The notes under the pieces: model-generated
What the model was told of the DNA's origin: nothing
Database searches by the model: none
What the model saw: only the letters and a program-made list of their open reading frames with translations
Shown: in pieces, positions 11,985 through 62,249 of the stretch
Position numbering within the stretch: position 1 is the stretch's first letter
Layout of the letters: the number at the start of each line of letters is the position of its first letter
Source: Octopus sinensis
Lineage: Eukaryota
Assembly (NCBI RefSeq): GCF_006345805.1
Contig: NC_042997.1
Span: 138,508,001-138,572,000 of the forward strand
DNA length: 64,000 nt
Direction: 5' to 3'
Program-made: the position numbers and the translations under genes

Positions 11985-12311
11985 AAGTGGCTATGTGGTA
12001 AGAAGCTTGCTTCCCAACCACATGGTTCCGGGTTCAGTCCCACTGTATGGCACCGTGTGCAAGTGTCTTCTACAATAGATTCGGGCAGACAAAAGTCTTG
12101 TGAGTGGATTTGGTAGATGGAAAGTGAAAGAATCTCGTTATTTCATCTAGTTTCAGCTCACGAGTTGTGGCCATGCTGGGGCACCGCCAATGTGCTATGC
12201 TTACCGCACCTAGGTTTCCCAAGCGGTCACCCATCTAAGTACTGACTAGGCTCGACGTTGCTTAACTTCGGTGATCAAACGAGAACCGGTGCTTTCAACG
12301 TGATATGGCCG

Positions 12312-12375
<64 letters not shown>

Positions 12376-27790: not shown

Positions 27791-28343
27791 AAACACCCCG
27801 CCCCCACTAGAAAATAAACTTTAAAGTGTTACCCCCATAGTCTAGTGACTGAAACCATCACCAGGATTTAAGGCTGAAATGGGTTAGACAGTTTGACAGG
27901 ACCCAGCAAGCCAAAGAACTGCATTGAACTCCATTGTCAAGCTTTGATATGGTTTCTACAGCTGGATGTCCTTGTTAACACCAACCACTTTACAGTAAGC
28001 ACTGGAAGCATTTTTTTTTTTTGTAGTGGTGAGGTTAATTTTTCTGTTCATCCTTAATGATTGCTATTAAATAAAGTAACAGTCAAGTATTGGGGCTGAT
28101 GTAATCAACTCTATTCCACCTCCACGTTTGTGATTGTATGCCTAATTTAGAAACAACTATATACAAAGCATTCTGTATAAGTAAAAATTTTCATGCATCT
28201 TGAACTGCATTATCCAATATGTCTTCACGCCCCCCCTTTTTTTTTTAAGACAATAAGGTGTCCCCTCATTGATTCACATTGGGTAAGTAGAATGATTATA
28301 TGTTTCTTTGTTGACCTACAGTTTTCTTGTTTTAATATTCTGT

Positions 28344-28711
28344 AGGAGTGGCTGTGTGGTAAGTAACTTGCTTACCAACCACATGGTTCCGGGTTCAGTC
28401 TCACCGCGTAGGACTTTGGGGAAGTGTCTTCTACTATAGCCTCAGGCCGACCAAAGCCTTGTGAGTGGATTTGGTAGACGGAAACTGAAAGAAGCCCGTC
28501 GTATATATGTATATGTGTGTGTGTGTTTTCCCTCCAACATCGCTTGACAACCAATGCTGGTGTGTTTGTGTCCCTGTAACTTAGTAGTTCGGCAAGAGGC
28601 CGGTAGCATAAGTACTAGGCTTACAAAAAATAAGTCCTGGGGTCGATTTGCTCGACTAAAGGCAGTGCTCCAGCATGGCTGCAGTCAAATGACTGAAACA
28701 AGTAAAAGAGT
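28344..28711 (+). mobile_element. SINE family A, full length, young
   Basis: Close match to 30693-31077 and 35810-36160 across head, core and tail. Confidence 0.95.
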
Positions 28712-29269
28712 ATTATGAAAGGGCTTTTTATTGAGCTTATATGTATGGAGAAACCTGAAGGTCACCTCACCCTAAATATAATGATGAAATACAAATTTTG
28801 ATGAAGAAATGAAACAAAGCAAAAATTGTATCTGAACACTAAATTCGAAACTTTAATTCTCTCACCATAACAGCTATTGATTTTGGCATCTTCAAACATA
28901 GTGATAAGTTCATAATTAGCTGAATCAAGAAGACACTTCTCATCTAGCTGAAGTGTCAAGAATTTATATTCTATCACTGGCTTTCATCATCATCATCATC
29001 ATCAATGTTTTAACATCTACTTTTCCATGTTCACATGGGCTAGATGGAATTTGTTGAGGTAGATTTTTCCTACAACCATATGCTCTTTCCATCACCAACC
29101 CTCAACTGTTTCCAAATAGGGTAATATTTCCCCATGACCAGATATGTCTCAGAAGATTGGAAACAGAGGATAACACCTACATGGTGGCAAAACTCACTTG
29201 TGACTGTCACATGATGTGAAGGTAAGGAGGCAGTAACACACACACATACAACAGACTCCCTTCAGTTTC

Positions 29270-29500
29270 TTATTTCTTTACTGCCCACAAGGGGCTACAC
29301 ACAAAGGGGACAAACAAAGACAGACAAATGGATTAAGTCGATTACATTGACCCCAGTGTGTAACTGGTACTTATTTAATCGACCCCGAAAGGATGAAAGG
29401 CAAAGTTGACAGTGGCAGAATTTGAACTCAGAACATAGCGCAGATGAAATACCACTAAGCATTTCGCTTGGCAAGCTAACATTTCTGCCAGCTTGCTGTC
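29270..29500 (-). mobile_element. SINE family D with the CCCCTTGTGGGCAGTAAAGAAAT tail type
   Basis: Homologous to 13572-13788. Another 3' fragment is at about 45130-45290. Confidence 0.85.
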
Positions 29501-30142
29501 TTCCTTCAGTTTCTGTATGCCAAATCCATTCGCCAGGCTATGGTTGGCCCAGAGCTATAGTAGAAGCCACCTACCCTAGGTATCATGCAATGGATTGAAC
29601 CTGAAACCATGTGGTTGTGAAGCAAACTTCTTACCAAACAGCCATGGCTGCATCTTACTGTGCTTTATTATTTTGGAGAAGTCTCTTACAATGGCTTAGC
29701 TGTAAAATAGGTACATTATAAAAGTAAAACTCATTGCTATCACATTGGAAGAAATTGGGGGCATTTCAATCCCAAGTCAGCTCTGACCAAGCGCATCCAT
29801 GATAAAGTATTCCAACCATGACTATCCTATCTTTCTTCAAGAAATTTATCATCATCATCATTTAATGTCTATCTTCCATGATGGTATGGATTAGACAGTT
29901 TGATTGGAACTGGTAAGCCAGAGTGCTGCACCAGGCTCCAGTCTGATTTGGCTTGATTTCTACAGCTGGATCCCTTCCTAATGCCAACCATTCTACAGAG
30001 TGTACTGGGTATCCTTTACATGTCACCAGCATTTTAGAGAATATTATCCAATGTGTTTTTTTTTTTCTAATTTTAAGATGGTAATGTGTGGTTTGATGAC
30101 GACTTAGCTGCTACTTCTAGCAAATTCAGTCATCATGTAGAG

Positions 30143-30289
30143 CAGGCTTGGGCAACCGTTTTTCAAGAAGTGGGCTGCATGAAACACGATTCATTGTCAA
30201 GCAGACTGCACTACCAAAATAGTCAAGATAATTTTTCATTATGTGTGCCATTTAGAATGTCTTGTGGGCTGCAGTTTACCCATGGCTAA
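30143..30289. mobile_element. hAT (Charlie-like) MITE with 8-bp TSD
   Basis: Starts CAGGCTTGGGCAA and ends TTACCCATGGCTAA. ATGTAGAG is duplicated at 30135-30142 and 30290-30297. An 8-bp TSD is the hAT hallmark. Confidence 0.78.
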
Positions 30290-30463
30290 ATGTAGAGGTT
30301 TCTGTTAGGAAAACTGACATAAGGTACATTTTTCTTATTCTAGACTTGTAGCGCATAGTTCAAAACTGCTGGTTGGCTAGTTTATCCTTTCCAAAAGGAT
30401 CCAAGAATCATCTAGAGTTCAATCTTCTAGTAACACTTTCAACAGTATGAAAACTGACATTAA

Positions 30464-31293
30464 CTCTTTTGCATTTAAATTGACTATATCTGGCCAAAAT
30501 ATTCTCTCTGGTTTTGGCTCAAACAGATCCAGCTTCTCACACCTACTCTATAATGTCATACTAAAAACAAGGAAACTGCAGCAAAGCTGCGTGATAGTGG
30601 TGTCAGACATGGCATGCAGACCATCATATAACTTGTTTGACACAGCGTTTTTATTCTTCTCTTCCATTTTATTTTGACATGCGCATTACATACTCTTTTA
30701 CTTGTTTCAGTCATTTGACTGCGGCCATGCTAGAGCACTGCCTTTAGTCAAGCAAATCGACCCCAGGATTTATTCTTTGTAAGCCTAGTACTTATTCTAT
30801 CGGTCTCTTTTGCCGAACTAAGTTACGGTGACGTAAACACTCCAGCATTGGTTGTCAAGAGATGTTGGGGGGGGGGGGCACAAACACAGACACACACATA
30901 TATACATATATATGACGGGCTTCTTTCAGTTTCCGTCTACCAAATCCACTCACAAGGCTTTGGTCGGCTCGAGGCTATAGTAGAAGACACTTGCCCAAGG
31001 TGCCACACAGTGGGACTGAACCTGGAACCATGTGGTTGGTAAGCAAGCTACTTACCACACAGCCACTCCTGCGCCTATGTTCATTGTTCTTTTTCTGGTT
31101 CCAACTCAAAACTATTTACAGATCACAACCATCTCATAAACTGTGTACGTGAGGAGTGTTTTGTGCACCGAAGGTTGTGAAGTAAATAATCACATCATCG
31201 AAATCTTGAAGCCACAAGATAATGTATGACTAATTCAAAACAATGTGAATAAATAAGCCTTACATTTGACAGAATAACCTGAATGTTAAAGGG
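30464..31293. mobile_element. piggyBac-type MITE split by nested insertions
   Basis: Left part about 30464-30565 after TTAA; right part about 31186-31293 ending AATGTTAAAGGG. The two parts align to the halves of the 25068-25413 copy. Confidence 0.75.
30693..31077 (-). mobile_element. SINE family A, full length, young
   Basis: Complete head, core and tail. Confidence 0.95.
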
Positions 31294-31486
31294 TGCAAGT
31301 AAACTGAGGGAGGAAACTCGATATTCAAGATTGCAGTTAATATATTCAGGTGAGATGAGAGCAACTGATGTGGACATGTGACACACATGAATGATTCTCT
31401 TCCTTCCTCTTTTGGTGCTTAACTTCTGATGGAGTCATAAGGATACTGACATAACATGTGACATAGCTTTTATTGTTTTTCTTCTA

Positions 31487-31893
31487 CCTTTTACTCATTT
31501 CAGTCATTGGACTGTAGCCATGCTGGAGCACCACTACGAAGGGTTTACTCAACCAAATCAGCTCCAGTACTCATTTGTTTTTAAAAGTCTGGTACTTATT
31601 CTATTAGTCTCTTTTATCAAACTGCTAAGTTAGGAGAGATGTAAACAAACCAATATTGGTTATCAAGTGATGGATGGGGTAGACGAACACAATGACACCC
31701 CACCACACACACAAATATATATGTATTCAAGACAGGCTTCCATGTAATTTCTGTTTACCAAATTCACTGACAAGGCATCGGTCAGCCTAGAGGTGTAGTA
31801 GAAGACACTTGCCCAAGGTGCTGCACAATGAAATGAACCTGAAAACTCATGGTTGCAAAGTAAGCTTCTTAACCACACAGTCATGCCAGCACC
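31487..31893 (-). mobile_element. SINE family A, older copy
   Basis: Same modules, more diverged. Confidence 0.85.
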
Positions 31894-33939
31894 TACCTTG
31901 GGTATTTTTAAAATCTGAGTCCATCTTTCTCCAACTTTGAACATAATTAATATTTTCCAGAAAAAAAGGAAAAGAATTACTATCCCACCCTAGTACAGGG
32001 GTGGTGCTTTATTTATCTAGCCTAAAGAGATGAAAGGCAAAGTTGTCTTTGGTAGGATTTGGACTGAGAGCATAGAAAGCTGGAAGGAATATCGCAAGCT
32101 GGTGCTCTAACTGGGGAGAAAGAAGTGGTGAAGTATGATTTAACCCTTTGCCTGTCCTGTATATCACATGTGATACATTTCCCTGGTGTCCATACATCAT
32201 ATATGATGCCCATTCCTAATATTTTTTCAACCACTTGAGTGATGAGGGACTTATGAAAGGAAAGCTTTGTTTAAGTCAGAATGTACGAAACAAGGGCTAA
32301 CTAAAAGTTTGAAAACAAGCATGGACATTTAGGACAAACTTATGAAATACAGACATTCTATCTGGACAGGCAAGTGGTTAAGGATATTGTTGTTGTTTGG
32401 AGCTCCAAGTCAACCCTAATTAGAAGGCCTATGGTCAAAGGCATTCTAGCCATGGTAATTCTGAGTTGTTTTCAGATAGGGTATACCTAGGGCTATCTAC
32501 AATTACAACTAATGTGTAATTTCTTTTTTAAGATGATATGGTGTAATTTGAAGGAGGTTTTGTTGCTATTTCTAGCAGGTTGAGTGACAGACACAGCATA
32601 GTATGCTGCATATGTCCCTCTCTCTCTCTCTCACACACACATACATTTTGCTTAGGCATTGTGAGACTAATAACATGGTGTGGAACTCAATGTACATATA
32701 CTTCAGAATGAAGTGCTACTCAGGCACTCAACTATGAATCCACTTAGAGCAGAAACAGCTGTAAGCTAATGAAGTTCATAAGATAATCACTTATTTTTTT
32801 GTCATCTCCAAAAAAGAAAACAAATGTTAAGACAATAATGATGATGGTGGTGAAAATGAGAATTTCAGCAAACTAACAAGATCTACTTCATTGATTTTAA
32901 GAACATAAAAGAGAGTTGTAAAATTAAGAAAATCAATCCATTGCCATATTTTCTTACAGTTTAGTAGTGTTCTCATAGAGATACTGAACCATAAAGCCAA
33001 TTTTGGTACCATAGGTTCAAACACTGAAATATCAGACACATACATAGGCACAAGCATCCAGCAAACAGTGATTTTACTATGAAATGGATAGCAAAACAAG
33101 TTTCCTAGGTTTCGACTTTTATTAACCAAGACCTTCAGGATACTGTATTTCTTTCTACTATAGGCACAAGGCCTGAAATTTTGGGGGAGTTGGCTAGTCA
33201 ATTATATCAACCCCAGTGCTAACTGGCACTTATTTTATCAACCCAAAAAGAATGAAAGGCAAAGTTAACCTTGATGGGATTTGAACCCAGAGCATAAAGA
33301 TGCAAAAATGCGACTAAAAATTTTTGTCCAACTTGCTAACATATCTACTAGCTTTCTACCTATAGGATACCATATTAGAAATTGCAGAACACCAGACTAT
33401 CTACTTGCAATCTTCTGTATTCCAAAGTCCAAATTCTTTTCTTTATTTGAGGGCAGTAAAAATAAGTTCTGTACTAGAGTTCTTGCAGTTATTTATACCT
33501 CTCTCACAGAAATATGTTATCTGGTTTTAAAGTAAGAAATCACTATTTTAAAACATTTAAATAAACTAAATTGGTTATCAACTGCATAAATCAGCAAAGT
33601 TGATATAAATAAATAAATAAGTATACATCCTTCTTCAAACCATGGGAATACATACAAGTAGTGCTTATTTTTGGATTATGTAATACTAAATGGATCTGAT
33701 ACAAATCTCCCCACAGTAAGCTGCTAGTCTATCATTAATTAGTTATGCTACATGGAGACGAAGTTCAATACTTAGCTGTCTGTCTTTATAAGATGAAGTA
33801 AGATGCTATTTCTTGAGCAATGACATGTTGAATTACCTTACAACAGGTCTTGAACTGCTTACTCAGGAGTATGTAGGTCAATAAACTTAACCATTTAGCC
33901 AGTTATCCTTTACAGTGACTATTAATGATTCATGTAGTG

Positions 33940-38243: not shown

Positions 38244-38512
38244 GTAGGCATTTATGGAGTGAATTTTAGGGCTTATAAATCTAATATTTTCCTATCCTTC
38301 CCATATGCTACTCATATCTGCACTCAGAGCAAGTGGGAAGAGGGAGAAATAGAGGGAGAGAGAGATAGGAGAGAGAGACATAGTGCTTGCTACTGTTCAT
38401 GTTTAAGTTTACACTAGGATAAGAAGCATCGTTGTTTCCATAATGTCACCATGTCTCGTACCCTAGTAGTGAGAAAACCGTCATCTAATGCATTATAATA
38501 ATAATAATAATA

Positions 38513-39072
38513 AATGCCCTGATGCAGTACCAAGCAGTGGCTCTCATGGCTTCTGATCTTAACTGATTGGAAGTGTTATCATGTACATTGTTTTGTCTTG
38601 GTATAAAAGATGGGCTACAGCAAATATTCTGCTCAATACCACAGGTTTGCTTGTCAGTTGTTTGACCGTAACCAGTTGAGCATGTCCCTTAGTGGCTGAC
38701 GATATGTGCATCTCTGATCACGAGCAGAAGTGGTGGGGGAGCATCATAGCCATGTGTTGAGAGGGATTCTTTGAGGTTTGAATAATTCACCTCTGGAAAC
38801 ATGGGTGTTTCGTTCAACATCCTTAAACAGCCCTTATTCAGGGACCTTTTGAGTGGGATGGGTTACTCGACCAGAAGAAAATTCTAACTGGGCCCCGCCC
38901 GCAAGATCATGTGCCGTTTATCTTGATATGAGATCACCATGTTGTGCACATATGGTTGTGATGCATGTGCCTGGTGTACCCCTATCAGACAGGTAGTCAT
39001 GATGGGTATACTACGCTTCGTATGTTTTACCCCAGTGTTACTTTGATGGCATGCACTGCACTCTCACTCAAT
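38513..39072 (-). mobile_element. Probable 5'-truncated LINE 3' end inserted in (TAA)n (R4/Dong-like behaviour)
   Basis: A GC-richer 560-bp block with (TAA)n immediately on both sides, ending on the minus strand ...GCATCAGGGCATTT(ATT)n. No diagnostic RT or endonuclease motif was read, so the clade is an inference. Confidence 0.55.
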
Positions 39073-40074
39073 AATAATAATAATAATAACAATAATGTGA
39101 TTTGATCTTCACATTCTTTGAATTCACTAACCATATTTCTGAACTAGATTAAAAACATTCTCTTCCAAAACAGACTGGTTTCATTAACCATCAGATATTT
39201 GTTTTGAAGAGGAGAATCCTTTAATTTTAGCTAATTGCAGCACAAATTCTTGTGTTTTTTTTTTTATGACGATCAACTGCAGCAATTTTAAAAAAATGTA
39301 CAAAGTTTCCATCTTAATTCATATAGCCATTTTATAGGCACAAACAACTGTGTGCTTAGAAGCTTGCTGCGCAACCACATGGTTTCAAGTTTAATCCCAT
39401 AAAGTTCCACAATGAGCAAATGCTTTCTGTTATAGTTCCCAGATGACTGCAGCCTTGAGAGAGTATTTGATAGATGCCTGTCATATGTGTGTGTGTGTGT
39501 ATGCATATGATGTGCATGTGTATGTTGGTGTCTCCTTGTCTTGACATCGCATGACAGTGACAATTACTTAAATGAGTGTCACTGACATACAAACAGTATC
39601 ATTCATTCTCAATATTCCGTGAACATGTCAGGCCATGGGAAATATTACCTTGCTTGGAAAACAGGTGAGGGTTGGTGATAGGAAAGGCATCCAGTCATAA
39701 AAGCTGCCTTAATAAACTCTGTCCGACCCATGCAAGCATTGAGAAGAGAATGTTAAAATGATGATGATGATGATATGTATAGATGCATGAATTTATATAG
39801 GTAAAGTAAATATCAGAGTCATTGCAATCTATAAAGAAACAGCAAGAATTAATTAAAGATACTGCAAGCTTTTCTCCTGGTAGACTGGAGATACTGTCAA
39901 GTTGGAAGCCCTTCAATATCTTCAGTAGGTACCTCAGGGCTACAATGGTTTTGCTCAAATATAAATATATATATACACACACACACACACACATATACAT
40001 AATACACACACACATATAGACATATATATACAAACACATACACATCTGCCTGCCTGCCTTTATCTATCTATATA

Positions 40075-40554: not shown

Positions 40555-42282
40555 TTGGGTCATCCCATGAATAATGCGGTTTTTTTAATACTTCTATTTT
40601 TCAAAATTAAGATAAACAAAGTTCTTTTTTAATCTAAAATATACTCTCCATTTTCTACAAAGCCCCTCTTCCAAAATTCACTTGTCCATGATGAAAAATA
40701 CTCCTGACCTTGTCTAAAGAATTTTCATTTTTAACATCCAAATGATTTTGAAGACTATGGAATAAATGATAATCAGATGGGGCAATGTCCGGTGAATATG
40801 GTGGGTGGGGCATCACTTCCCATTCAAACTGCTCCAGCCTTTGGAATGTTATCCTCGCTGTATGTGGGTGAGCATTATTCTGATGGATGAACACCTTTCA
40901 TCTTGAAACCAAAGATGGTAATTTTTCTTCTACTGCTAACTTAAGACACTCACAATAGATCTCCTCTGTTATCATTTGGTTTAGGTTTAAAAGTTCAAAG
41001 TGTGCTAAACCTTTCATATCCCACCAAACAGAAAACAATACCCTATGTGGGTGAAGACCTTCTTTAGCCTGGGGTGTCAGCGTTTCTCCTTTCCTTACCA
41101 GCACCTGACATTTTATAGAGAACCCATTTCTTATCACCAGTCACTATTCGGTCCAAAAAAGGTTCATTTGTGAGATGTGACAGCAAAGAAGAGAACACAT
41201 TCACTCTCTATGTGTGATTACACATGCAAAGTTTGTAAGAAACTCATTGACCGAATTTACTGACTTTTCCGATGATGTGCATGTGTTGAAGAATGGTTGG
41301 AGGATCAAATCCAAGCTTCTCTGGTAGTTCCTCTACAGTTACGATGGGATTTTGTTCCACCAGAGTTTGCAAGATGTCTTCGTTGAGCTCTACAGATCTT
41401 TCAGGACGAGGCTCGTCTTCTAGGCAGTAGTCTCTGGTTTGGAATTTCTAGAACCACCATTGACACAGACTTATGCTTACTGTCTGACCCCACATACTGC
41501 AGTAATATTCCTCAAACTTGGCATTGAATTGTTGCCTTTATTGAACTCATAAAGTAAAATATGCCAAATATGATCCTTTGTCACTTCCATTATAGCTTTG
41601 AAAAAATATCTGTTAAAACTGAACTGTACTCATCAAAACTTGCACTAAGAATAAGGACAAGGTAAAATTATTACCTGGTTTTATAGCAAGTACGTAAACA
41701 ATAAATAGTAAATAGTAGTAAATTGACTACACGCGTTTCGTGGCTATATTTTCAAATAGATAATAATAATAAAATCAATACGATTTAAAATTAACTTTAT
41801 CTAAAATTAATTCTATTTAAATATATGTATACATATATACACACATATATATAGACACATACATATATATACACACACACACACACATATATATACACAC
41901 ACATATATATACACACACACATATACATACACACACATACATATATATACATATATGCATATATATCTACATATATATATATATACAGACATATACATAC
42001 ATACATACACACACACACACATACATATATATACATATAGACATATACATACATACACACACACACACATATATATGTGTGTGTGTGTACACATATCACT
42101 TCCATTATAGCTTTGAAAAAATAACTTAAAATTGAACTGCACTCACCAAAACTTGCACTAAGAATAAGGACTAGGTAAATATATAACCTGCTTTTAGAGC
42201 AAGTTGATGCAGGTAGTTTATCCTGTCCCACTCTGACTTTTAGTTCATGCAACTGAAATGCACTATTTATGGGATGACCCAA
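40555..42282 (-). mobile_element. Mariner (DD34D) transposon with both TIRs; transposase pseudogene about 41590 to 40630
   Basis: TIRs TTGGGTCATCCCATGAATAATGC (40555) and GCACTATTTATGGGATGACCCAA (ending 42282), each flanked by TA. Peptides MEVTKDHIWHILLYEFNKG, FLDRIVTGDKKWVLY, EGLHPHRVLFSVWWDMKG and [20 protein letters not shown], with multiple stops and frameshifts. Confidence 0.96.
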
Positions 42283-51978: not shown

Positions 51979-52309
51979 ACATGTAAATATACATATAACA
52001 GTACACCACCAATTTGCCAGTACCTGATTGATGAGTACTTATTTAATGCAGATGAATTGTGAGGAGGAACCCAAAATTTCTGTGGCCATTAGTTTTCCTG
52101 TGTGACCAAAGGTGGCTTTGTGAATTACTGATGTTCATATGTATTTCTTACACTGCACTTGTTGGCGGGACACTAAGATTTTGAGAGATCTGCTTATTTA
52201 GCTTAAAGTTACCTTCAGGTAAGAAAACTAACAGTATCAACATTAGTGTCAAACATAAACACTAGTCACATCAATCCCAGATAAAGTAGACTTGTTTATG
52301 GTATTTTAT

Positions 52310-52915
52310 ATGCCGCTACATTCTGAGTTCAAATTCCGCAAAGGTTGACTTTACCTTTTATCCTTTCAGGGTGGATAAATTAAGTACCAGTGAAACATTG
52401 GGGTTGAAGTAATTGACTTGTCTCCTCTCCTTCAATTTCAGGCCTTTTGCCAATGGTAGAAAGGATTATTATTAGTAGTATTAAGGTGGTGAGCTGGAAG
52501 AATCGTTAGCATGCTGGACAAAATGCTTAGTGGTACTTCACCCGCTGCTATGGTCTGAGTTCAAATTTTGCCAAGGTCAACTTTACCTTTTTATCCTTTT
52601 GGGGGTTGTTAAATTAAGTACTAGTGAAACATGGGGGCTTATGTAATCGACTAGTCCTCTCTCCCACAAATATCAGGCCTTGTGCCTGTAGTAGAAAAGA
52701 TTATTATTATTATTATTATTATTATCATATAACCTTGGTAAGGCGGCAAGCAGCATTTCTTCGGGCTCTTTATGTTCAATTTCAGCTGAGTTTGACATTG
52801 CCTTTCATCCTCTGAGGTCAATAAAACGAAGTTGAAAACTAGGGTCAGTATAATCGAACTAATTACTCTTCCCACCTAAAATTGCTGGCCTTGTGTCAAA
52901 ATTTGAAATTGTTAT
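52310..52915 (+). mobile_element. Chain of three family-D SINEs joined by (ATT)n tails
   Basis: Three consecutive units; the first two end GTAGAAA(G/A)GATTATTATT and the third ends AATTTGAAATTGTTATT. Confidence 0.88.
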
Positions 52916-56977: not shown

Positions 56978-57244
56978 TACACACACACACATATACATAC
57001 ACATATATATATATACACATATATACATACATATATATAAACATATACATACATATATATATATGCATATATATACATACACACATCTATATATATACAT
57101 ATGCATACATATATACATATGCATATATATACAGATACATTTATATACATATATATATATGCACATATATACATATATATTCACATATATATACATACAT
57201 AATATATACACACACACACAGATATAAATATATATACATATATA

Positions 57245-57387
57245 TAAATTTAATTTGCCAAAATATTTTTGTCACTTTGAGACCGCGACCTGTTCACTGA
57301 CAAAATTCCGTGATGCAGTAGAGAATTTTGTCAGTGAACAGGTCACGGTCTCAAAGCGACGAAAATATTTTGGCAAATTAAATTTAA
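57245..57387. repeat. ~143-bp fold-back element with ~64-bp arms and a 14-nt loop
   Basis: TAAATTTAATTTGCCAAAATATTTTTGTCACTTTGAGACCGCGACCTGTTCACTGACAAAATTC pairs with GAATTTTGTCAGTGAACAGGTCACGGTCTCAAAGCGACGAAAATATTTTGGCAAATTAAATTTA. Confidence 0.95.
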
Positions 57388-57546
57388 ATGTTGAAATGAA
57401 TCTAACGGTTTTTTGGGTTTTAAATGGATAATAAACACTTTCCATGCTGTAATTGTTTTTGTTCCAGCACAACATTTCAGATCAGGTCACTTGCTATGCA
57501 TGTACATCTCTGTAATTATGATAATTATTATTGCACTAATAATAAT

Positions 57547-60500
57547 CCTTTCTAAAATCTTGAGGGAGGGTGATAGACTATTACATCAACCCTAGTGATT
57601 GACTGATACTTATTTCATCGACCCTGAAAGGATGAAAGGCAAAGTGAACATTAGCAGAACTTGAACTCAAAACATAAAGATGGATGAAATGCTGTTGAGT
57701 ATTTTGTTCGGAGTTCTGCCAGCTTAATAAAAGTAATAATATTGGTTTCCAATTATGGCACAAGGCCAGCAATTTCAGGGGAGGGGCTGAGTGAATTACA
57801 TTGACCCCAGTGTTCAACTGGTACTTATTTTATGGACCCATTATTTGAATTGAGAACATAAAGTTTGAAGAAATGCCACTAAACATTTTGTCTGGTGTGC
57901 TAATGATTCTGCCAACTTGCTGCGTTGATAATAATAATAATCCTAGTAGAGGCAGAAGGCCTAAAATTTTGGAAGAGGGGCTACTTGATTATATTTTTCC
58001 CAGAGCATAACTGGTACTTTATTTCATCAACCCTGAAAGGATAAGAGGCAAAGTTCACCCCAACAGAATTTGAACTCAAAATGTAAACATGGATGAAAAG
58101 CTGCTAAGCACTTTACTTAGCATGATAACATTTTTGCAAGCATGCCACCTTAATAATAAATAATAAATAATAATAACAATGGTTTCAAATTTTGGCACAT
58201 GGCAAGCAATTCAACTGGTACAAAGACCCTGAAAGAACGAAAGGCTAAGTCGAACATGAAGACAGATGAAATGCCACTAAACATTTTGCCCAGCTGCAAA
58301 TGATTCTGCCTGTTTATTATATAATAACGTGTTTTGTTGTTAAAGGACTAGGGTACAGTTGATTATATCAACCCCAAAACTTCACTAGTACTTTATTTTA
58401 TCGACTCTGGAAATACAGAAGGCAAAGTTGTCCTCAGAAGGATTTGAACTCAGAATGTTGCAAGATCTTTTGTCTGACTCTCATCATTCCAGCAATCTCT
58501 TATTAAGGGCCAAAAATATAAACAAAATTGTAATTCTAATATAGACACAAGAACTGAAATTTGAGAGAGAGGAGTATAGTCACATTAGAACATTTCTAAT
58601 ATCTAACTGCTCACTTTATATTGGGTTGTCTGGAAAGTTCATGCCAATTTTTAAAGGAAAGGAAAAGGTCAATGATTTTGTTGCACAATGCGTCTTCATC
58701 CTTCCTTTAACTTGAAAATACCCTCTTCCCAGAATTGAGTTGGTTTCATGGCAAAGAATTCATCAAGGTATCTTTTTACGTCATCTAAGGAATTGAAATT
58801 TTACCATTAAGACTATTCTGCAGAGACCTGAATAAGTGGAAATCTGAAGGAGCACTATCTGGTGAATATGGAGGGTGCGGTAACACATCCCAGTCAAGCT
58901 GCAGCAATTTTTGTCTGGTTCCCAAAGAAACGTGCAGTCTTGCATTATCATGTTGGAAAACAACATCCTTCCTGTTGGCCAATTCTGGACGTTTCTCTTG
59001 AATTGTTGCCTTTAACTCGTCCAATTGTGTGCAGTATTTCTCCGAATTAATTGCCTGGTTACTTGGGAGGAGTTTTATCTGATGTTCTGATGATTCTGCC
59101 AAACCAACCACTATATGATAATGATAATTTTTTTCTACAAAAGTGCAAGGCCTGAAATTTGTAGGGTATGGAGCTTGTTGATAACTTTGACCTCAGTGTT
59201 TGACTGGTACTTATTTTATTTATCCTGAAAGATGCAAGGCAAAGCCAACCTCAACAGTATTTGAGCTTGGAACATAAAAGCAGACAAAATGCCACTAAGC
59301 ATTTCACTCAAAGCAGTAACAATTCAGCCATAATAATAACACTTTATACTTTGGACACAAGGTCTCAGATTTTATGGGAAGAGGATAGCCAAATCCATCA
59401 ATCCCAATCAGTACTTATGAAGCCCAAAAGGACAGAAGGCGAAGTCAACCTCAGTGGGATTTGAACTCAGTGTGCTAAAGATTCTGCCAGCACCCCTCTT
59501 TAATAATAATAATGGTTTCAAAGTTTGCCACAAAGGGAGCAATTTTGAGAGAGGGGATGAGTTGATTACATTAACCCTAGTGTTCAACTGGTACTTATTT
59601 GATTGAGTCCGAAAGGATGAAAGGCCAAGTCAACCTCAGTGGAATTTGAACTCAGAATGTAACAACGGGCAAAATACCACTAAGCATTTCATCCAGTGTG
59701 CTAACGTTTCAGCCAGCTTGCAACCTTAATAATAATTGTAATAATACTCATTTCTACTATAGACACAAGGCCTGAAATTTTGGAGGAGAGGACTAGTCAA
59801 TTAAATCAACCCCAGTACTCAACTGGTACTTATTTTATGGACCCTGAAAGGATGAAAGGCTAGGTCAACCCTGACAGAATTTCAATTCAGAAAGTAAAAA
59901 TGGAGAAAATGCCACTAAGCATTTCATCTGGAATGCTAACAATTCTACCAGTTTTCCACAATAATAATAATGATGATGATGATAGTTTCAAATTTTTGGC
60001 ACAAGGCCAGCAAGTTCAGGGAGGAGGTAAGTCAATTACATCAACCCCAGTTGATGGTACTCTAAGTTAAACTCAGAAAGGGGAGAGAGACAAAGATTAA
60101 CCCTCATGTAGACATAACTAAATAGCACGGTCCATTTCATCCGATGCTCTAACAACTCTATCCTGTACAATAATAATAATTTCAAATTCTGGCACAAGCA
60201 GTTTGAGGGGGGGGGAACAAGTCAATTACATTGACCCCCAGGGTTCAACAGGTACTTATTTTATTGACCCTGAAAGGATGAATGGCAAAGTCAACCTCGA
60301 CAGAATTTGAACTCCGAACACAAAGGCAGATGAAATACCACTAATCTTTTTGCCCGGTGTGCTAACTATTCTGTCAGTAATAGTATAATAATAATAATAA
60401 TAATAATTCTTTCTACTATAGGCACAAGACATGAAATTTTGGGAAGGGGGATAGTCGATTACATCAACCCTAGTACTCAACTGGTACTTAATTTATCGAC

Positions 60501-61570
60501 CCCAAAAGGATGAAAGGCAAAGTCGACCTCAGCGGAATTTGTACTCAGAATGTAGCAGCAGACAAAATAATGCGAAGCATTTCGCCTGGTGTGCTAACGA
60601 TTCTGTCAGCTTGCCACCTTAATAATAATAATAATAATAATAATCTTTTCTACTATAGGCACAAGGCCTGAAACTTTGGGGAGAGGGATAGTTGATTACA
60701 TTGACCCCAGTACTCAACTGGTACTTAATCTATCAACCCTGAATTTGAACTCAGAATGTAGCGGCAGATGAAATACTGCTAAGCATTTTGCCCGGTGTGC
60801 TAACGATTCTGCCAGCTTGCCACCTTATAATAATATAATAATAATAATAATAATATAATATAATAATAATAATAGTAGTTTCAAATTTTGGCATGAGGCT
60901 AACAATTTCGTTAGGGGAAGGGGTGTAGTTGTTGACTACATTGAACCTAGTACTTGACTGGTACATATTTTACGAAACTTGAAAAGATGAAAGGCAAAGT
61001 CAGCCTCTGCAGAATTTGAACTCAGATCATAAAGAATCAAAAGAAATGCTGCAAAGCATTTTATACGACATGCTAACTATACTGCTAGGTCACTGCCATA
61101 ATAATAATAATAACAACAACAATAATGGTTACCAATTTTACCACAAGAAGGCAGCAGTTTCAGTGGAGGGGTTGAGTTAATTACATCAACCTCAGTGTTC
61201 AACTAGTACTTATTTTATCAACCCCAAACGGATAAAAGGCAAAGTTGACCTTGGCGGAATTTGAACTCAGAACGTAGTAACAGGTGAAATACTGCTAAGC
61301 ATTTTGTCCAGTGCGTTAACGGTTCTGCCAGCTCGCTGCCTTAAATAATAATAATGATGATGATGATGATAATAATAATAATAATAATAATAATAATCCT
61401 TTCTACAATAGGCAAAAGCCTGAAATTTGGGGTAGGAGGATAATCGATTACGTCAACCTCAGTGCATAACTGGTACTTAACTTATCGACTCCAAAAGGAT
61501 GAAAGGCAAAGTCGACCTCGCTGGAATTTGAACTCAGTATGTAGCGATGGGTAAAATATTGCTAATAATA

Positions 61571-61608
<38 letters not shown>

Positions 61609-62101
61609 TATTATTATTATCCTCATTACTTTTAATTTTGGCATAAGGCCAGAAATTTTAGAGAAGCAAGTTGACTACATTGGCCCAGCACTTGACTGGT
61701 ACTTATTTTATCAAACCCAAAAAAGGATGTAAGGCAGAGTTTACCTTGGCAGAATGTGAACCCAAAATGTGAAGAGTCAAAACTGATGCCGCTAAGTATT
61801 TTGTTTGATGCATTAACGATTAAGTTGATGATACTGATTTTTAACACAGACAGAAGGGTTTTAATTTGGCAGAGAGTTGGTGTATATGTGTATGTGTGTG
61901 TGTGTGAGGTGGGGGGGTATGGTTGATTATATCAACCCTACATGATGTAATTTGACTATATATACCGAGTCCTTTGTTTCTATCAACCCAGGAAGGATGA
62001 AAAGCAAAGTCAACAGCAGCAGTATTTGAATTTCGAATGTAAAGCACTGGAAAAAATTACTGTAAAGCATTCTTTCTGACGCTCTAATGATTCCACTAGC
62101 C
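57547..62101 (-). mobile_element. Head-to-tail chain of about 19 family-D SINEs separated by (TAA)n linkers
   Basis: Repeated ~130-260-bp units containing ACTGGTACTTATTTTATCGACCC and GAAAGGATGAAAGGCAAAGTC and GAATTTGAACTCAGAA, all in one orientation, each separated by a TAA/TGA/CAA triplet run. Confidence 0.95.
58621..59075 (-). mobile_element. Mariner (DD34D) 3' fragment with one TIR, inserted in a chain unit
   Basis: TA at 58619-58620, then TTGGGTTGTCTGGAAAGTTCATGCC. Peptide [51 protein letters not shown] has exactly 34 residues between the last two catalytic Asp. Confidence 0.95.
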
Positions 62102-62249
62102 CATGATGATGATAATAATCATATAGCTAGTAATAATTCCTCAAGAACTGGTCTGATTGTTTCGAGTTGAAGCATCTATGCAGACATAGGTTATGATTAG
62201 AAAGTTACTGACATATGGAGAATGTCACGGGTTAGTTATACTGTAGGGC

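What the first reader, a model, noticed from the sequence alone, without database searches (positions are those of the whole stretch)
57547..62101. A self-extending SINE chain: about 19 co-oriented, independently diverged SINEs linked by (TAA)n
Seen: about 4.6 kb made almost entirely of family-D units on the minus strand, starting near 57547, 57742, 57941, 58180, 58340, 58533, 59130, 59343, 59513, 59747, 59984, 60181, 60406, 60643, 60878, 61127, 61397, 61630 and 61845. Each is separated by a TAA-type triplet run. Two tail subtypes are mixed irregularly, the units carry different private deletions, and divergence ranges from near-consensus (60406-60826, 61127-61563) to heavily decayed at both edges. 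One unit is interrupted by a mariner. That pattern does not fit tandem duplication. Known: R4/Dong LINEs target (TAA)n, and target-primed insertion at a strand-specific site fixes orientation. Inference: each inserted SINE brings a new (ATT)n tail that is itself a target, so the locus grows as a positive-feedback landing pad and records SINE subfamily history, with younger copies inside. It also clusters about 19 pol III promoters. Caveat: isolated copies without TAA flanks exist (8870, 33155, 40350), so targeting is not absolute.
Basis: partly seen in the sequence, partly recalled or inferred. Interest (0 to 1): 0.82.

Follow-up and report, generated by a model that had tools for sequence, protein, structure and literature searches.

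The report
Head-to-tail chain of 19 SINEs
A 4.6-kb stretch of this cephalopod-like genome is a chain of 19 same-direction copies of a short retroposon that landed one by one in or next to each other's (TTA)n tails; it is a striking example of an insertion habit already known from other retroposons.

Summary
A profile search finds 19 copies of one ~214-bp SINE family at 57555-62102, all on the minus strand. The background is about 0.2 copies per kb. 13 of 18 junctions hold a (TTA)-type run.

It is not a tandem duplication:
- Adjacent units are no more alike than distant ones (68.7% vs 68.6%), and there is no periodicity.
- 16 of 17 units have their nearest relative outside the array.
- On a tree of 116 copies the array units do not cluster.
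- Terminal branches run from 0.06 to 0.40.
- At least three sequence types are interleaved.
- A true tandem repeat of this SINE elsewhere scores 94-100%.

Chains occur genome-wide. Close pairs outside the array are co-oriented 47:5, and 15 of 29 young copies sit in chains. Target-site duplications show one site reused, one insertion between two existing units, and one insertion at the start of a tail. Duplications mostly begin TTAT or ATAT, which matches the tail.

Best reading: serial target-primed insertions at a target that each insertion regenerates. The R4/Dong partner is untested, and strict TAA targeting is not met (10 of 28 young copies lie at such runs). "Younger inside" is not significant, and only about 6 units keep both promoter boxes. 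Positive feedback is suggested, not shown.

The parts
61910..62102 (-). Unit 1, the 5'-most on the minus strand. Model positions 9-179, very decayed, (GT)n-rich insert, B-like remnant at its 3' end.
   Evidence: nhmmer. 78% non-CpG identity. Longest terminal branch, 0.40.
61631..61821 (-). Unit 2, type B, 5'-truncated at model position 19.
   Evidence: 84%. No TTA run upstream of it.
61566..61630 (-). Tail and spacer of unit 2: 11 perfect TTA-type triplets with a short inverted (TAA) stretch.
61397..61565 (-). Unit 3, young type A (A body and A tail), 5'-truncated at position 45. It joins the preceding TTA run through TTA microhomology.
   Evidence: (87%).
61126..61342 (-). Unit 4, type B, full length.
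   Evidence: 86%. Both box motifs are near consensus.
60878..61097 (-). Unit 5, type B, full length.
   Evidence: 85%.
60644..60826 (-). Unit 6, young type A, full ends, 31-bp internal deletion (model 87-117).
   Evidence: (97%). Terminal branch 0.066.
60408..60620 (-). Unit 7, young type A, full length, the best preserved.
   Evidence: (95%). Terminal branch 0.060. Its tree sister is a copy on another chromosome.
60180..60377 (-). Unit 8, type B, starts at model position 12.
   Evidence: 90%.
59985..60160 (-). Unit 9, type B, head decayed.
59748..59959 (-). Unit 10, A-type tail on a B-like body (older intermediate type).
   Evidence: (88%).
59513..59727 (-). Unit 11, type B, full length.
   Evidence: 86%.
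59342..59489 (-). Unit 12, A-like tail, large internal deletion.
   Evidence: 81%.
59131..59330 (-). Unit 13, A-like tail on a B-like body.
   Evidence: (80%).
58534..59115 (-). Unit 14, split. The head piece lies at about 59076-59115 and the 3' piece at 58534-58610 (model 137-210). About 450 bp of mariner-like DNA lies between them, and the middle of the SINE is missing.
58800..59060 (-). Mariner-like transposase fragment inside unit 14.
   Evidence: tblastn E = 5e-17 to an ORF that carries Pfam Transposase_1.
58346..58462 (-). Unit 15, model 64-179, both ends lost.
   Evidence: 80%.
58180..58314 (-). Unit 16, type B with internal deletions. The B tail ends at 58180.
57943..58151 (-). Unit 17, A-like tail on a B-like body.
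   Evidence: (81%).
57743..57923 (-). Unit 18, type B, with the same 31-bp internal deletion as unit 6.
   Evidence: (89%).
57547..57724 (-). Unit 19, the 3'-most. A-like tail on a B-like body, followed by a short TTA run and then unique DNA.
   Evidence: (84%).
62103..62140 (-). Degenerate ATT/ATC microsatellite remnant just 5' of unit 1. Possibly the original landing site.
   Evidence: This is an inference.
52299..52907 (+). Separate 3-unit chain of the same family on the opposite strand. It shows that orientation is set within each chain and not by the region.

Best explanation
The array is a chain of 19 separate retrotransposition events of one ~214-bp SINE family. The family has a box A/B-like head, a shared body, and alternative LINE-type 3' ends A and B, both ending in (TTA)n. 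The events accumulated at one spot over a long time.

Inferred mechanism. The partner LINE's endonuclease nicks the bottom strand at an AT-rich site whose top strand begins TTAT or ATAT. The freed ...ATAA-3' end anneals to the (UUA)n tail of the SINE RNA and primes reverse transcription. Only one strand of a (TTA)n run can do this, so the new copy must point the same way as the copy whose tail it enters.

Each insertion leaves two good targets. One is an intact copy of the original site at its 5' side (the 5' target-site duplication with its upstream context). The other is a fresh (TTA)n tail plus duplication at its 3' side. The locus therefore stays, or becomes more, attractive, and chains can grow at both ends and internally.

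Shown: independent origin of the units, co-orientation, genome-wide chain formation, site reuse, and target-site duplications that start with tail-like sequence.

Inferred: annealing as the cause of the orientation lock, the identity of the LINE, and true positive feedback.
For: Independence of the units:
- Adjacent versus non-adjacent identity is 0.687 vs 0.686, with no effect at lags 1-7. The nearest relative lies outside the array for 16 of 17 units.
- On an ML tree of 116 copies the array label changes 14 times, against 14.3 in shuffles. The only array-array sister pair has support 22.
- Terminal branches are 0.06-0.40, and non-CpG identity to consensus is 76-97%.
- Young A, A-tail-on-B-body and B types are interleaved, and 5' truncation points differ.
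- No paralogous array exists; the best other match is 72%.
- Positive control: a true tandem repeat of this SINE has 94-100% identity and identical breakpoints.

Family-wide behaviour:
- Close pairs outside the array are 47 co-oriented to 5 opposed (P = 1e-9).
- 15 of 29 young A copies lie in chains.
- (ATT)>=3 lies directly upstream of 10 of 28 young copies, against a base rate of 0.45%.
- Other co-oriented multi-unit places of 0.9-2.4 kb exist.

Target-site duplications:
- In L008 the same 15-17 bp site is duplicated around two successive units.
- In L024 the duplication spans an older tail-head junction.
- In R1_C13 6608 the duplication starts at the first base of the upstream unit's tail.
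- By my reading of that output, about 13 of 16 clear duplications start TTAT, ATAT or TATA.

Same habit in other tailed elements: a 600-bp (TTA)n-tailed repeat and a (TATC)n-tailed LINE also lie head to tail.

Shared SINE-LINE tails: the C-type 3' end matches the 3' end of an APE+RT LINE.

Precedent: sense-oriented Alu self-insertion at A-rich stretches, explained by tail-target annealing (PMC2836564).
Against: - The LINE with an A- or B-type 3' end was not found in the 390 kb available.
- In the random 200 kb, 0 of 23 5'-intact copies lie at an ATT run, and only 1 of 29 (ATT)>=4 runs is a SINE tail. Tail targeting is therefore strong only for the young A subfamily, and free (TTA)n runs are not saturated.
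- Within the array the spacers are nearly pure TTA, so target-site duplications cannot be read there and the order of insertion is not recoverable.
- With a link probability of about 0.22, a 19-unit chain is far longer than a simple geometric model predicts. Some local factor remains unexplained.
- C-type copies, which lack a TTA tail, did not give a clean negative control (6 of 14 have a downstream neighbour, mostly because of tandem repeats).
Confidence: 0.72

Rival explanations
1. A strictly (TAA)n-specific LINE of the R4/Dong group mobilises the SINE. Its endonuclease recognises the repeat itself, so tails are targets because of enzyme specificity and not because of RNA-target annealing.
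For: Dong elements target (TAA)n, including one in a snail (PMC3812793). Dong-R4 is the most abundant recently active LINE group annotated in Octopus vulgaris (PMC13282606). A full-length Dong exists in the O. bimaculoides repeat library (PMC9115989). Young A copies are about 80-fold enriched at ATT runs.
Against: 18 of 28 young 5'-intact copies are not at an ATT run, and they carry 8-25 bp target-site duplications at varied AT-rich sites. That fits a loosely specific enzyme. RTE elements, which are also active in octopus, have trinucleotide-repeat 3' UTRs and 10-20 bp duplications (PMC2887409, PMC9115989). No LINE was linked to the A or B tail here.
Confidence: 0.2
2. Tandem amplification of a SINE-plus-tail unit by unequal crossing-over or replication slippage, followed by long divergence.
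For: Unit spacing is roughly regular (about 200-270 bp). TRF reports two 2-copy rows at 75-80%. True SINE-derived tandem repeats do exist in this genome and in reptiles (PMC10702118).
Against: Neighbours show no excess similarity and there is no periodicity. The units do not cluster on the tree. Subfamilies are interleaved, truncation points differ, and branch lengths spread six-fold.
Confidence: 0.04
3. A regional hot spot, either open chromatin or a neutral 'safe' region, collects insertions regardless of tails, and co-orientation comes from transcription or selection.
For: The 19-unit length exceeds what a constant link probability predicts. Young A copies also lie near each other at a 60-150 kb scale. 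Distant pairs show a weak excess of the same orientation (36:21).
Against: Junctions are exact tail-to-head contacts. Target-site duplications show reuse of the same bases. A second chain 5 kb away points the other way. The other families in the 59 kb around the array are not piled up in the same manner.
Confidence: 0.08
4. Retrotransposition of multimeric read-through transcripts, or an assembly artefact, created the array.
For: (TTA)n tails contain no T4 terminator, so pol III read-through is conceivable. The genome is a long-read assembly.
Against: Units differ from one another by 13-40%, which excludes a collapse or expansion artefact. No multi-unit block recurs elsewhere at high identity.
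Confidence: 0.03

Closest known systems
Sense-oriented Alu self-insertion at A-rich stretches and tails (Levy, Schwartz & Ast 2010, PMC2836564)
   Same: A new SINE copy enters the tail-like stretch of an older copy in the same orientation. The explanation is annealing of the RNA tail to the nicked target during target-primed reverse transcription. The target-site duplication begins with tail-like bases.
   Different: The tail here is (TTA)n and not poly(A). The partner is not L1. About half of the young copies are in chains, and one chain reaches 19 units. Reuse of the intact 5' duplicated site is seen directly.
Microsatellite-targeting LINEs such as Dong on (TAA)n (Kojima & Fujiwara 2004; Xiong & Eickbush 1993, as cited in PMC3812793)
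   Same: TAA-type repeats are used as landing sites. Dong-R4 elements are abundant in octopus (PMC13282606).
   Different: Targeting here is a preference and not a rule (10 of 28). Ordinary target-site duplications occur at other sites. The element is a SINE, and no Dong 3' end was matched.
RTE-clade LINEs and their SINEs with short trinucleotide-repeat 3' UTRs (Malik & Eickbush 1998; PMC2887409; the octopus RTE of PMC9115989)
   Same: Simple-repeat tail, 10-20 bp target-site duplications, many 5'-truncated copies, and a new microsatellite created at each insertion.
   Different: Self-chaining has not been described for them in the papers I read. The link between the A/B tails and an RTE is untested.
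SINE-derived satellites (Vassetzky et al. 2023, PMC10702118)
   Same: Head-to-tail arrays made of SINE sequence.
   Different: Those arise by tandem amplification of one unit. The array here fails every test for that, while a small true example lies elsewhere in this genome (L040:136-870).
Serial head-to-tail accretion of non-LTR elements: Zepp clusters in Chlorella, HeT-A/TART at Drosophila telomeres (from memory, not checked here)
   Same: Arrays are built by successive target-primed insertions onto the tail or end of the previous copy.
   Different: Those are LINE-like elements at chromosome ends or in poly(A) tails. This is an internal locus with a SINE and a trinucleotide tail.

Membership tests
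SINE (non-autonomous non-LTR retroposon) | Short, non-coding, high copy number, dispersed | tested here: met
   214-bp consensus. 41 hits in 200 kb of random genome. More than 7800 first-look candidates genome-wide.
SINE (non-autonomous non-LTR retroposon) | Variable target-site duplications flanking single copies | tested here: met
   8-25 bp duplications at many loci, for example L006, L008, L017, L025, L030 and window 33150.
SINE (non-autonomous non-LTR retroposon) | 3' end shared with a LINE | tested here: inconclusive
   The C-type tail aligns with the 3' end of an APE+RT LINE. No LINE with the A or B tail lies in the sequence available.
tRNA-derived SINE | Head recognisable as a tRNA, with internal box A and box B | tested here: inconclusive
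   Box-like motifs are visible (TGGCAGAATCG; GAGTTCAAATTCC). ARAGORN finds no tRNA in the window, and Rfam gives no tRNA match even at E = 10 on a well-kept copy.
CORE-SINE superfamily (octopus OR1/OR2 of Ohshima & Okada 1994) | Conserved ~60-bp CORE domain in the body | not tested
   The body resembles the MIR core as I recall it. No reference sequence was available. The papers only say that OR1/OR2 are CORE-SINEs (PMC4758252, PMC4824008).
Tandem repeat / SINE-derived satellite | Neighbouring units are each other's closest relatives, with uniform period and breakpoints | tested here: not met
   for the array. The same measures are met by the control at L040:136-870.
Target of a strictly (TAA)n-specific LINE (Dong type) | Essentially all copies inserted in (TAA)n | tested here: not met
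   10 of 28 young copies and 0 of 23 copies in the random sample have an ATT run upstream. Clear non-TAA target-site duplications exist.
Target of a strictly (TAA)n-specific LINE (Dong type) | Partner LINE with a restriction-like endonuclease and a matching 3' end | not testable with these tools
Tail-directed self-insertion (Alu-in-Alu type) | New copy in sense orientation relative to the targeted copy | tested here: met
   19 of 19 in the array. 47:5 among close pairs elsewhere.
Tail-directed self-insertion (Alu-in-Alu type) | Insertion point at or in the tail-like stretch, with a duplication that starts with tail-like bases | tested here: met
   About 80-fold enrichment at ATT runs for young copies. 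Duplications start TTAT, ATAT or TATA in about 13 of 16 clear cases, by my count. R1_C13 6608 and L024 show the junctions directly.
Tail-directed self-insertion (Alu-in-Alu type) | Units of different age and subfamily | tested here: met

The most novel reading that the evidence does not exclude
Chain growth follows preferential attachment. Every (TTA)n-tailed retroposon (SINE types A and B, the 600-bp family X, perhaps the LINE itself) adds landing sites, so the chance of a further hit rises with chain size. This would give a heavy-tailed chain-size distribution genome-wide and make such 'reefs' a main route by which octopus genomes gained both SINEs and TTA microsatellites. The hint: young copies hit pre-existing chains of 1, 2 and 4 units in the ratio 6:7:2. 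That ratio fits weighting by unit number (P = 0.08) better than weighting by chain number (P = 0.0016).
Probability: 0.35. Interest if true: 0.6.

Novelty: new member of a known kind. Interest (0 to 1): 0.42.

Why it matters
- The locus gives a clean, sequence-level case of retroposons building an array by serial insertion rather than by duplication. The signatures that separate the two routes are all visible, and a true tandem repeat of the same family serves as a contrast.
- SINEs make up about 8-12% of octopus genomes by published estimates. If about half of the young copies land beside older ones, this bears on three things: how repeat annotation merges or splits copies, how insertion ages are read, and how TTA microsatellites arise.
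- Chains like this one are ready-made records of subfamily succession. They are also good markers for comparing Octopus species, because single-unit presence or absence should be informative.
- The biology itself, tail-to-target annealing in target-primed reverse transcription, is established. The finding extends it and does not overturn it.

Tried and rejected
A repeat search to fetch other long chains returned coordinates only. Genome-wide chain-length statistics therefore rest on 200 kb plus 29 loci of 3.2 kb.
- I looked for the partner LINE in four ways:
  - A/B tail matches without a SINE body gave two hits. The one I tested (R2_C6 38985) has a unique flank, with one genome match, so it looks like a severely 5'-truncated copy. 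The other (R1_C13 35404) was not searched; no ORF lies upstream of either.
  - RT and endonuclease ORFs in the sample belong to LINEs with other tails.
  - Family X proved non-coding.
  - A scan of all (ATT)>=4 runs for recurrent upstream sequence found only family X and a MITE-like repeat.
- tRNA origin: ARAGORN and Rfam were negative.
- C-type copies as a tail-less negative control: uninformative, because their 'neighbours' are mostly tandem repeats.
- The idea that the 5'-most unit of a chain is the founder fits the array, where unit 1 is the most diverged. It fails elsewhere: young copies are 5'-most in 7 of 15 chains.
- 'Younger inside' was tested and is not significant.
- The dog SINE paper's 'head-to-tail' refers to strand and not to arrays.
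Full report
**Setting.** The window is G000:C1:138508001-138572000 of a 2.72-Gb genome in 13,516 contigs. It is AT-rich (about 36% G+C) and full of microsatellites. The size and contig count match what I recall of the Octopus sinensis assembly. That identification is from memory and was not tested.

**The observation.** I built a profile from 29 dispersed copies fetched from the rest of the genome.
- The profile finds 33 copies in the window. Nineteen of them lie between 57555 and 62102, all on the minus strand.
- The background is 41 hits in 200 kb of randomly chosen genome and 14 in the other 59 kb of the window. The cluster is therefore about 20-fold denser than background (Poisson P about 1e-18), and the uniform orientation has P = 4e-6.
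- Read on the minus strand, each unit is a head, then a body, then a 3' end, then (TTA)n, and then the next head follows.
- 13 of 18 junctions keep at least three perfect triplets.
- Unit 14 is split by about 450 bp that encodes a mariner-type transposase fragment.

**The element.** The consensus is 214 bp.
- The head carries box A-like and box B-like motifs, but neither ARAGORN nor Rfam recognises a tRNA.
- The first ~175 bp are shared by three forms that differ in the 3' end:
  - A ends ...CCTATAGTAGAAAGGA followed by (TTA)n.
  - B ends ...GCCAAAATTTGAAACCA followed by (TTA)n.
  - C has a 60-bp end finishing ...AAAGAAATAG, with no TTA tail.
- The C end aligns with the 3' end of an LINE in the random sample that has endonuclease and reverse-transcriptase domains. 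The family therefore follows the usual rule that a SINE borrows its tail from a LINE.
- Body sites separate a young A type from B. Older A-tailed copies carry a B-like body.

**Serial insertion or tandem amplification?** Every test favours serial insertion.
- Mean identity of adjacent units is 0.687 and of non-adjacent units 0.686. Lags 1 to 7 are flat.
- For 16 of 17 units the closest relative among 137 copies lies outside the array. The one exception is a tie.
- On a maximum-likelihood tree of 116 copies the label 'array' changes 14 times, against 14.3 ± 0.8 for shuffled labels. The only array-array sister pair is non-adjacent and has support 22.
- Terminal branches range from 0.06 (units 6 and 7) to 0.40 (unit 1). 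Non-CpG identity to the subfamily consensus ranges from 76% to 97%.
- Young A units (3, 6, 7), A-tail-on-B-body units (10, 13, 17, 19) and B units are interleaved without pattern.
- Units start at different model positions: 1, 3, 4, 12, 13, 19, 45, 64 and others.
- No other place in the genome matches the array co-linearly above 72%.
- The tests can detect amplification when it is present. At L040:136-870 a piece of the same SINE is tandemly repeated with period 184, identical breakpoints and 94-100% identity.

**Chains are a habit of the family.**
- Outside the array, consecutive copies within 150 bp are co-oriented 47 times and opposed 5 times (P = 1e-9). Pairs further apart are 36:21.
- Of 29 young A copies picked only for similarity to unit 7, 15 lie in chains of 2 to 5 units inside their 3.2-kb windows. 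They sit at the 5' end (7), inside (4) or at the 3' end (4).
- An (ATT)>=3 run lies directly upstream of 10 of 28 such copies. The base rate in random sequence is 0.45%.
- Coordinates show further co-oriented multi-unit places of 0.9 to 2.4 kb, for example C3:56976272-56978698.
- A second chain of three units lies 5 kb from the array on the opposite strand. Orientation is therefore set within each chain.

**What the target-site duplications show.**
- Solitary copies have ordinary duplications of 8-25 bp at varied AT-rich sites. Examples are L006, L025, L029, L030, R3_C4 46700 and window 33150.
- L008: the same 15-17 bp site flanks a young A copy and then the older B copy behind it. The intact 5' copy of a used site was hit again.
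- L024: the duplication spans the end of one unit's tail and the first bases of the next head. The young copy entered an existing two-unit chain.
- R1_C13 6608: the duplication begins at the first base of the upstream unit's short tail.
- By my count, about 13 of 16 clear duplications start TTAT, ATAT or TATA. That is the sequence whose complement can pair with a (UUA)n RNA tail.
- Together these findings support target-primed reverse transcription in which the nicked bottom strand (...ATAA-3') anneals to the RNA tail. That alone explains the orientation lock. It also explains why each insertion regenerates the target on its 5' side and extends it on its 3' side.
- The same logic was proposed for sense-oriented Alu self-insertion at A-rich stretches (PMC2836564).
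- Two other tailed elements behave alike in the sample. A 600-bp non-coding repeat ending in (TTA)n lies head to tail. A (TATC)n-tailed LINE is followed by a truncated second copy.

**The partner LINE.**
- In its favour: Dong elements target (TAA)n, including one in a snail (PMC3812793). Dong-R4 is the most abundant recently active LINE group annotated in O. vulgaris (PMC13282606).
- Against a strictly specific enzyme: 18 of 28 young copies are not at such a run, and their 8-25 bp duplications at other sites look like the work of a loosely specific enzyme.
- An alternative partner: RTE elements are active in octopus and have a microsatellite 3' UTR (PMC9115989). In moths they have trinucleotide tails and 10-20 bp duplications (PMC2887409).
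- I could not find a LINE with the A or B end in the 390 kb I could read.

**Positive feedback and the other claims.**
- With a link probability of about 0.22 in the random sample, a 19-unit chain is vastly longer than a geometric model predicts. Either the hit rate rises with chain size or this locus has some extra attraction.
- Young copies hit pre-existing chains of 1, 2 and 4 units in the ratio 6:7:2. The random sample offers 25 singles, 6 pairs and one quadruple. This rejects weighting by chain number (P = 0.0016) and is compatible with weighting by unit number (P = 0.08). The samples are small, and neighbours are not always older than the copy counted.
- Free (ATT)>=4 runs are common, and only 1 of 29 in the random sample is a SINE tail. 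Tails therefore seem better targets than bare repeats. I cannot explain this.
- 'Younger copies inside' is not significant (rho 0.27-0.35).
- Only about 6 of 19 units keep both box motifs near the family consensus.

**Age.** The calibration quoted for O. vulgaris is Jukes-Cantor 0.065 at about 18 My and 0.2 at about 56 My (PMC13282606). On that scale, units 6 and 7 would be roughly 10-15 My old and the oldest units several times older. This is a rough inference from identity to small-sample consensus sequences.

**Verdict.** The mechanism belongs to a known kind. The partner LINE and true feedback remain open.

Noticed in passing
L040:136-870 (G000:C6:2913744-2914478): A genuine tandem repeat made of a C-type SINE piece: period 184, about 3 copies, identical breakpoints, 94-100% identity. 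This is a small SINE-derived satellite, and I used it as a positive control.
   Followed up: yes
window 38494-39100 (-); L050:4212-5386 (-); L049:8314-8917 (-): Family X, a ~560-600 bp non-coding repeat that begins right after an (ATT)n run and ends ...CATCAGGGCAT(TTA)n. Two copies lie head to tail. It is a second retroposon family with the same tail and the same habit.
   Followed up: partly
L038:8181-L039:3018 (R2_C6 28181-33018, minus strand): An LINE with endonuclease and RT domains whose 3' end resembles the C-type SINE tail. After its (TATC)n tail comes a second, 5'-truncated copy of the same LINE (81% amino-acid identity), so this is an LINE chain.
   Followed up: partly
window 12198-12316 (-): Full-length 5S rRNA match (104 bits, E = 1e-21). 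It is either a gene or a 5S-derived retroposon; I did not examine it further.
   Followed up: no
window 57242-57389: A 67-nt inverted repeat, 94% complementary, with 14 nt between the arms, lying about 160 bp from the 3' end of the chain. It is MITE-like.
   Followed up: no
window 60645-60826 and 57748-57923; L007:1384: The same 31-bp internal deletion (model 87-117, between short TTC repeats) occurs in units 6 (type A) and 18 (type B) and in one copy elsewhere, so in 3 of 120 copies. It could be recurrent slippage, conversion or chance. Unexplained.
   Followed up: partly
G000:C14:67844185-67844634; C1:142.44 and 142.59 Mb; C2:80.77 and 80.83 Mb: Among the 41 best genome matches to unit 7, three pairs lie within 0-150 kb of each other. 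About 0.1 such pairs are expected by chance. Young copies therefore also cluster regionally.
   Followed up: no
window 40727-41363 (-): A second mariner-like transposase remnant, about 35-38% identical to the Transposase_1 ORF of R1_C13.
   Followed up: no
random sample R4_C2 37.4-45.4 kb (L049-L050): An 8-kb region rich in ATT and ATC microsatellites holds 17 of the 29 (ATT)>=4 runs of the random sample, yet few SINE insertions. Free TTA runs are evidently not all equally used.
   Followed up: no
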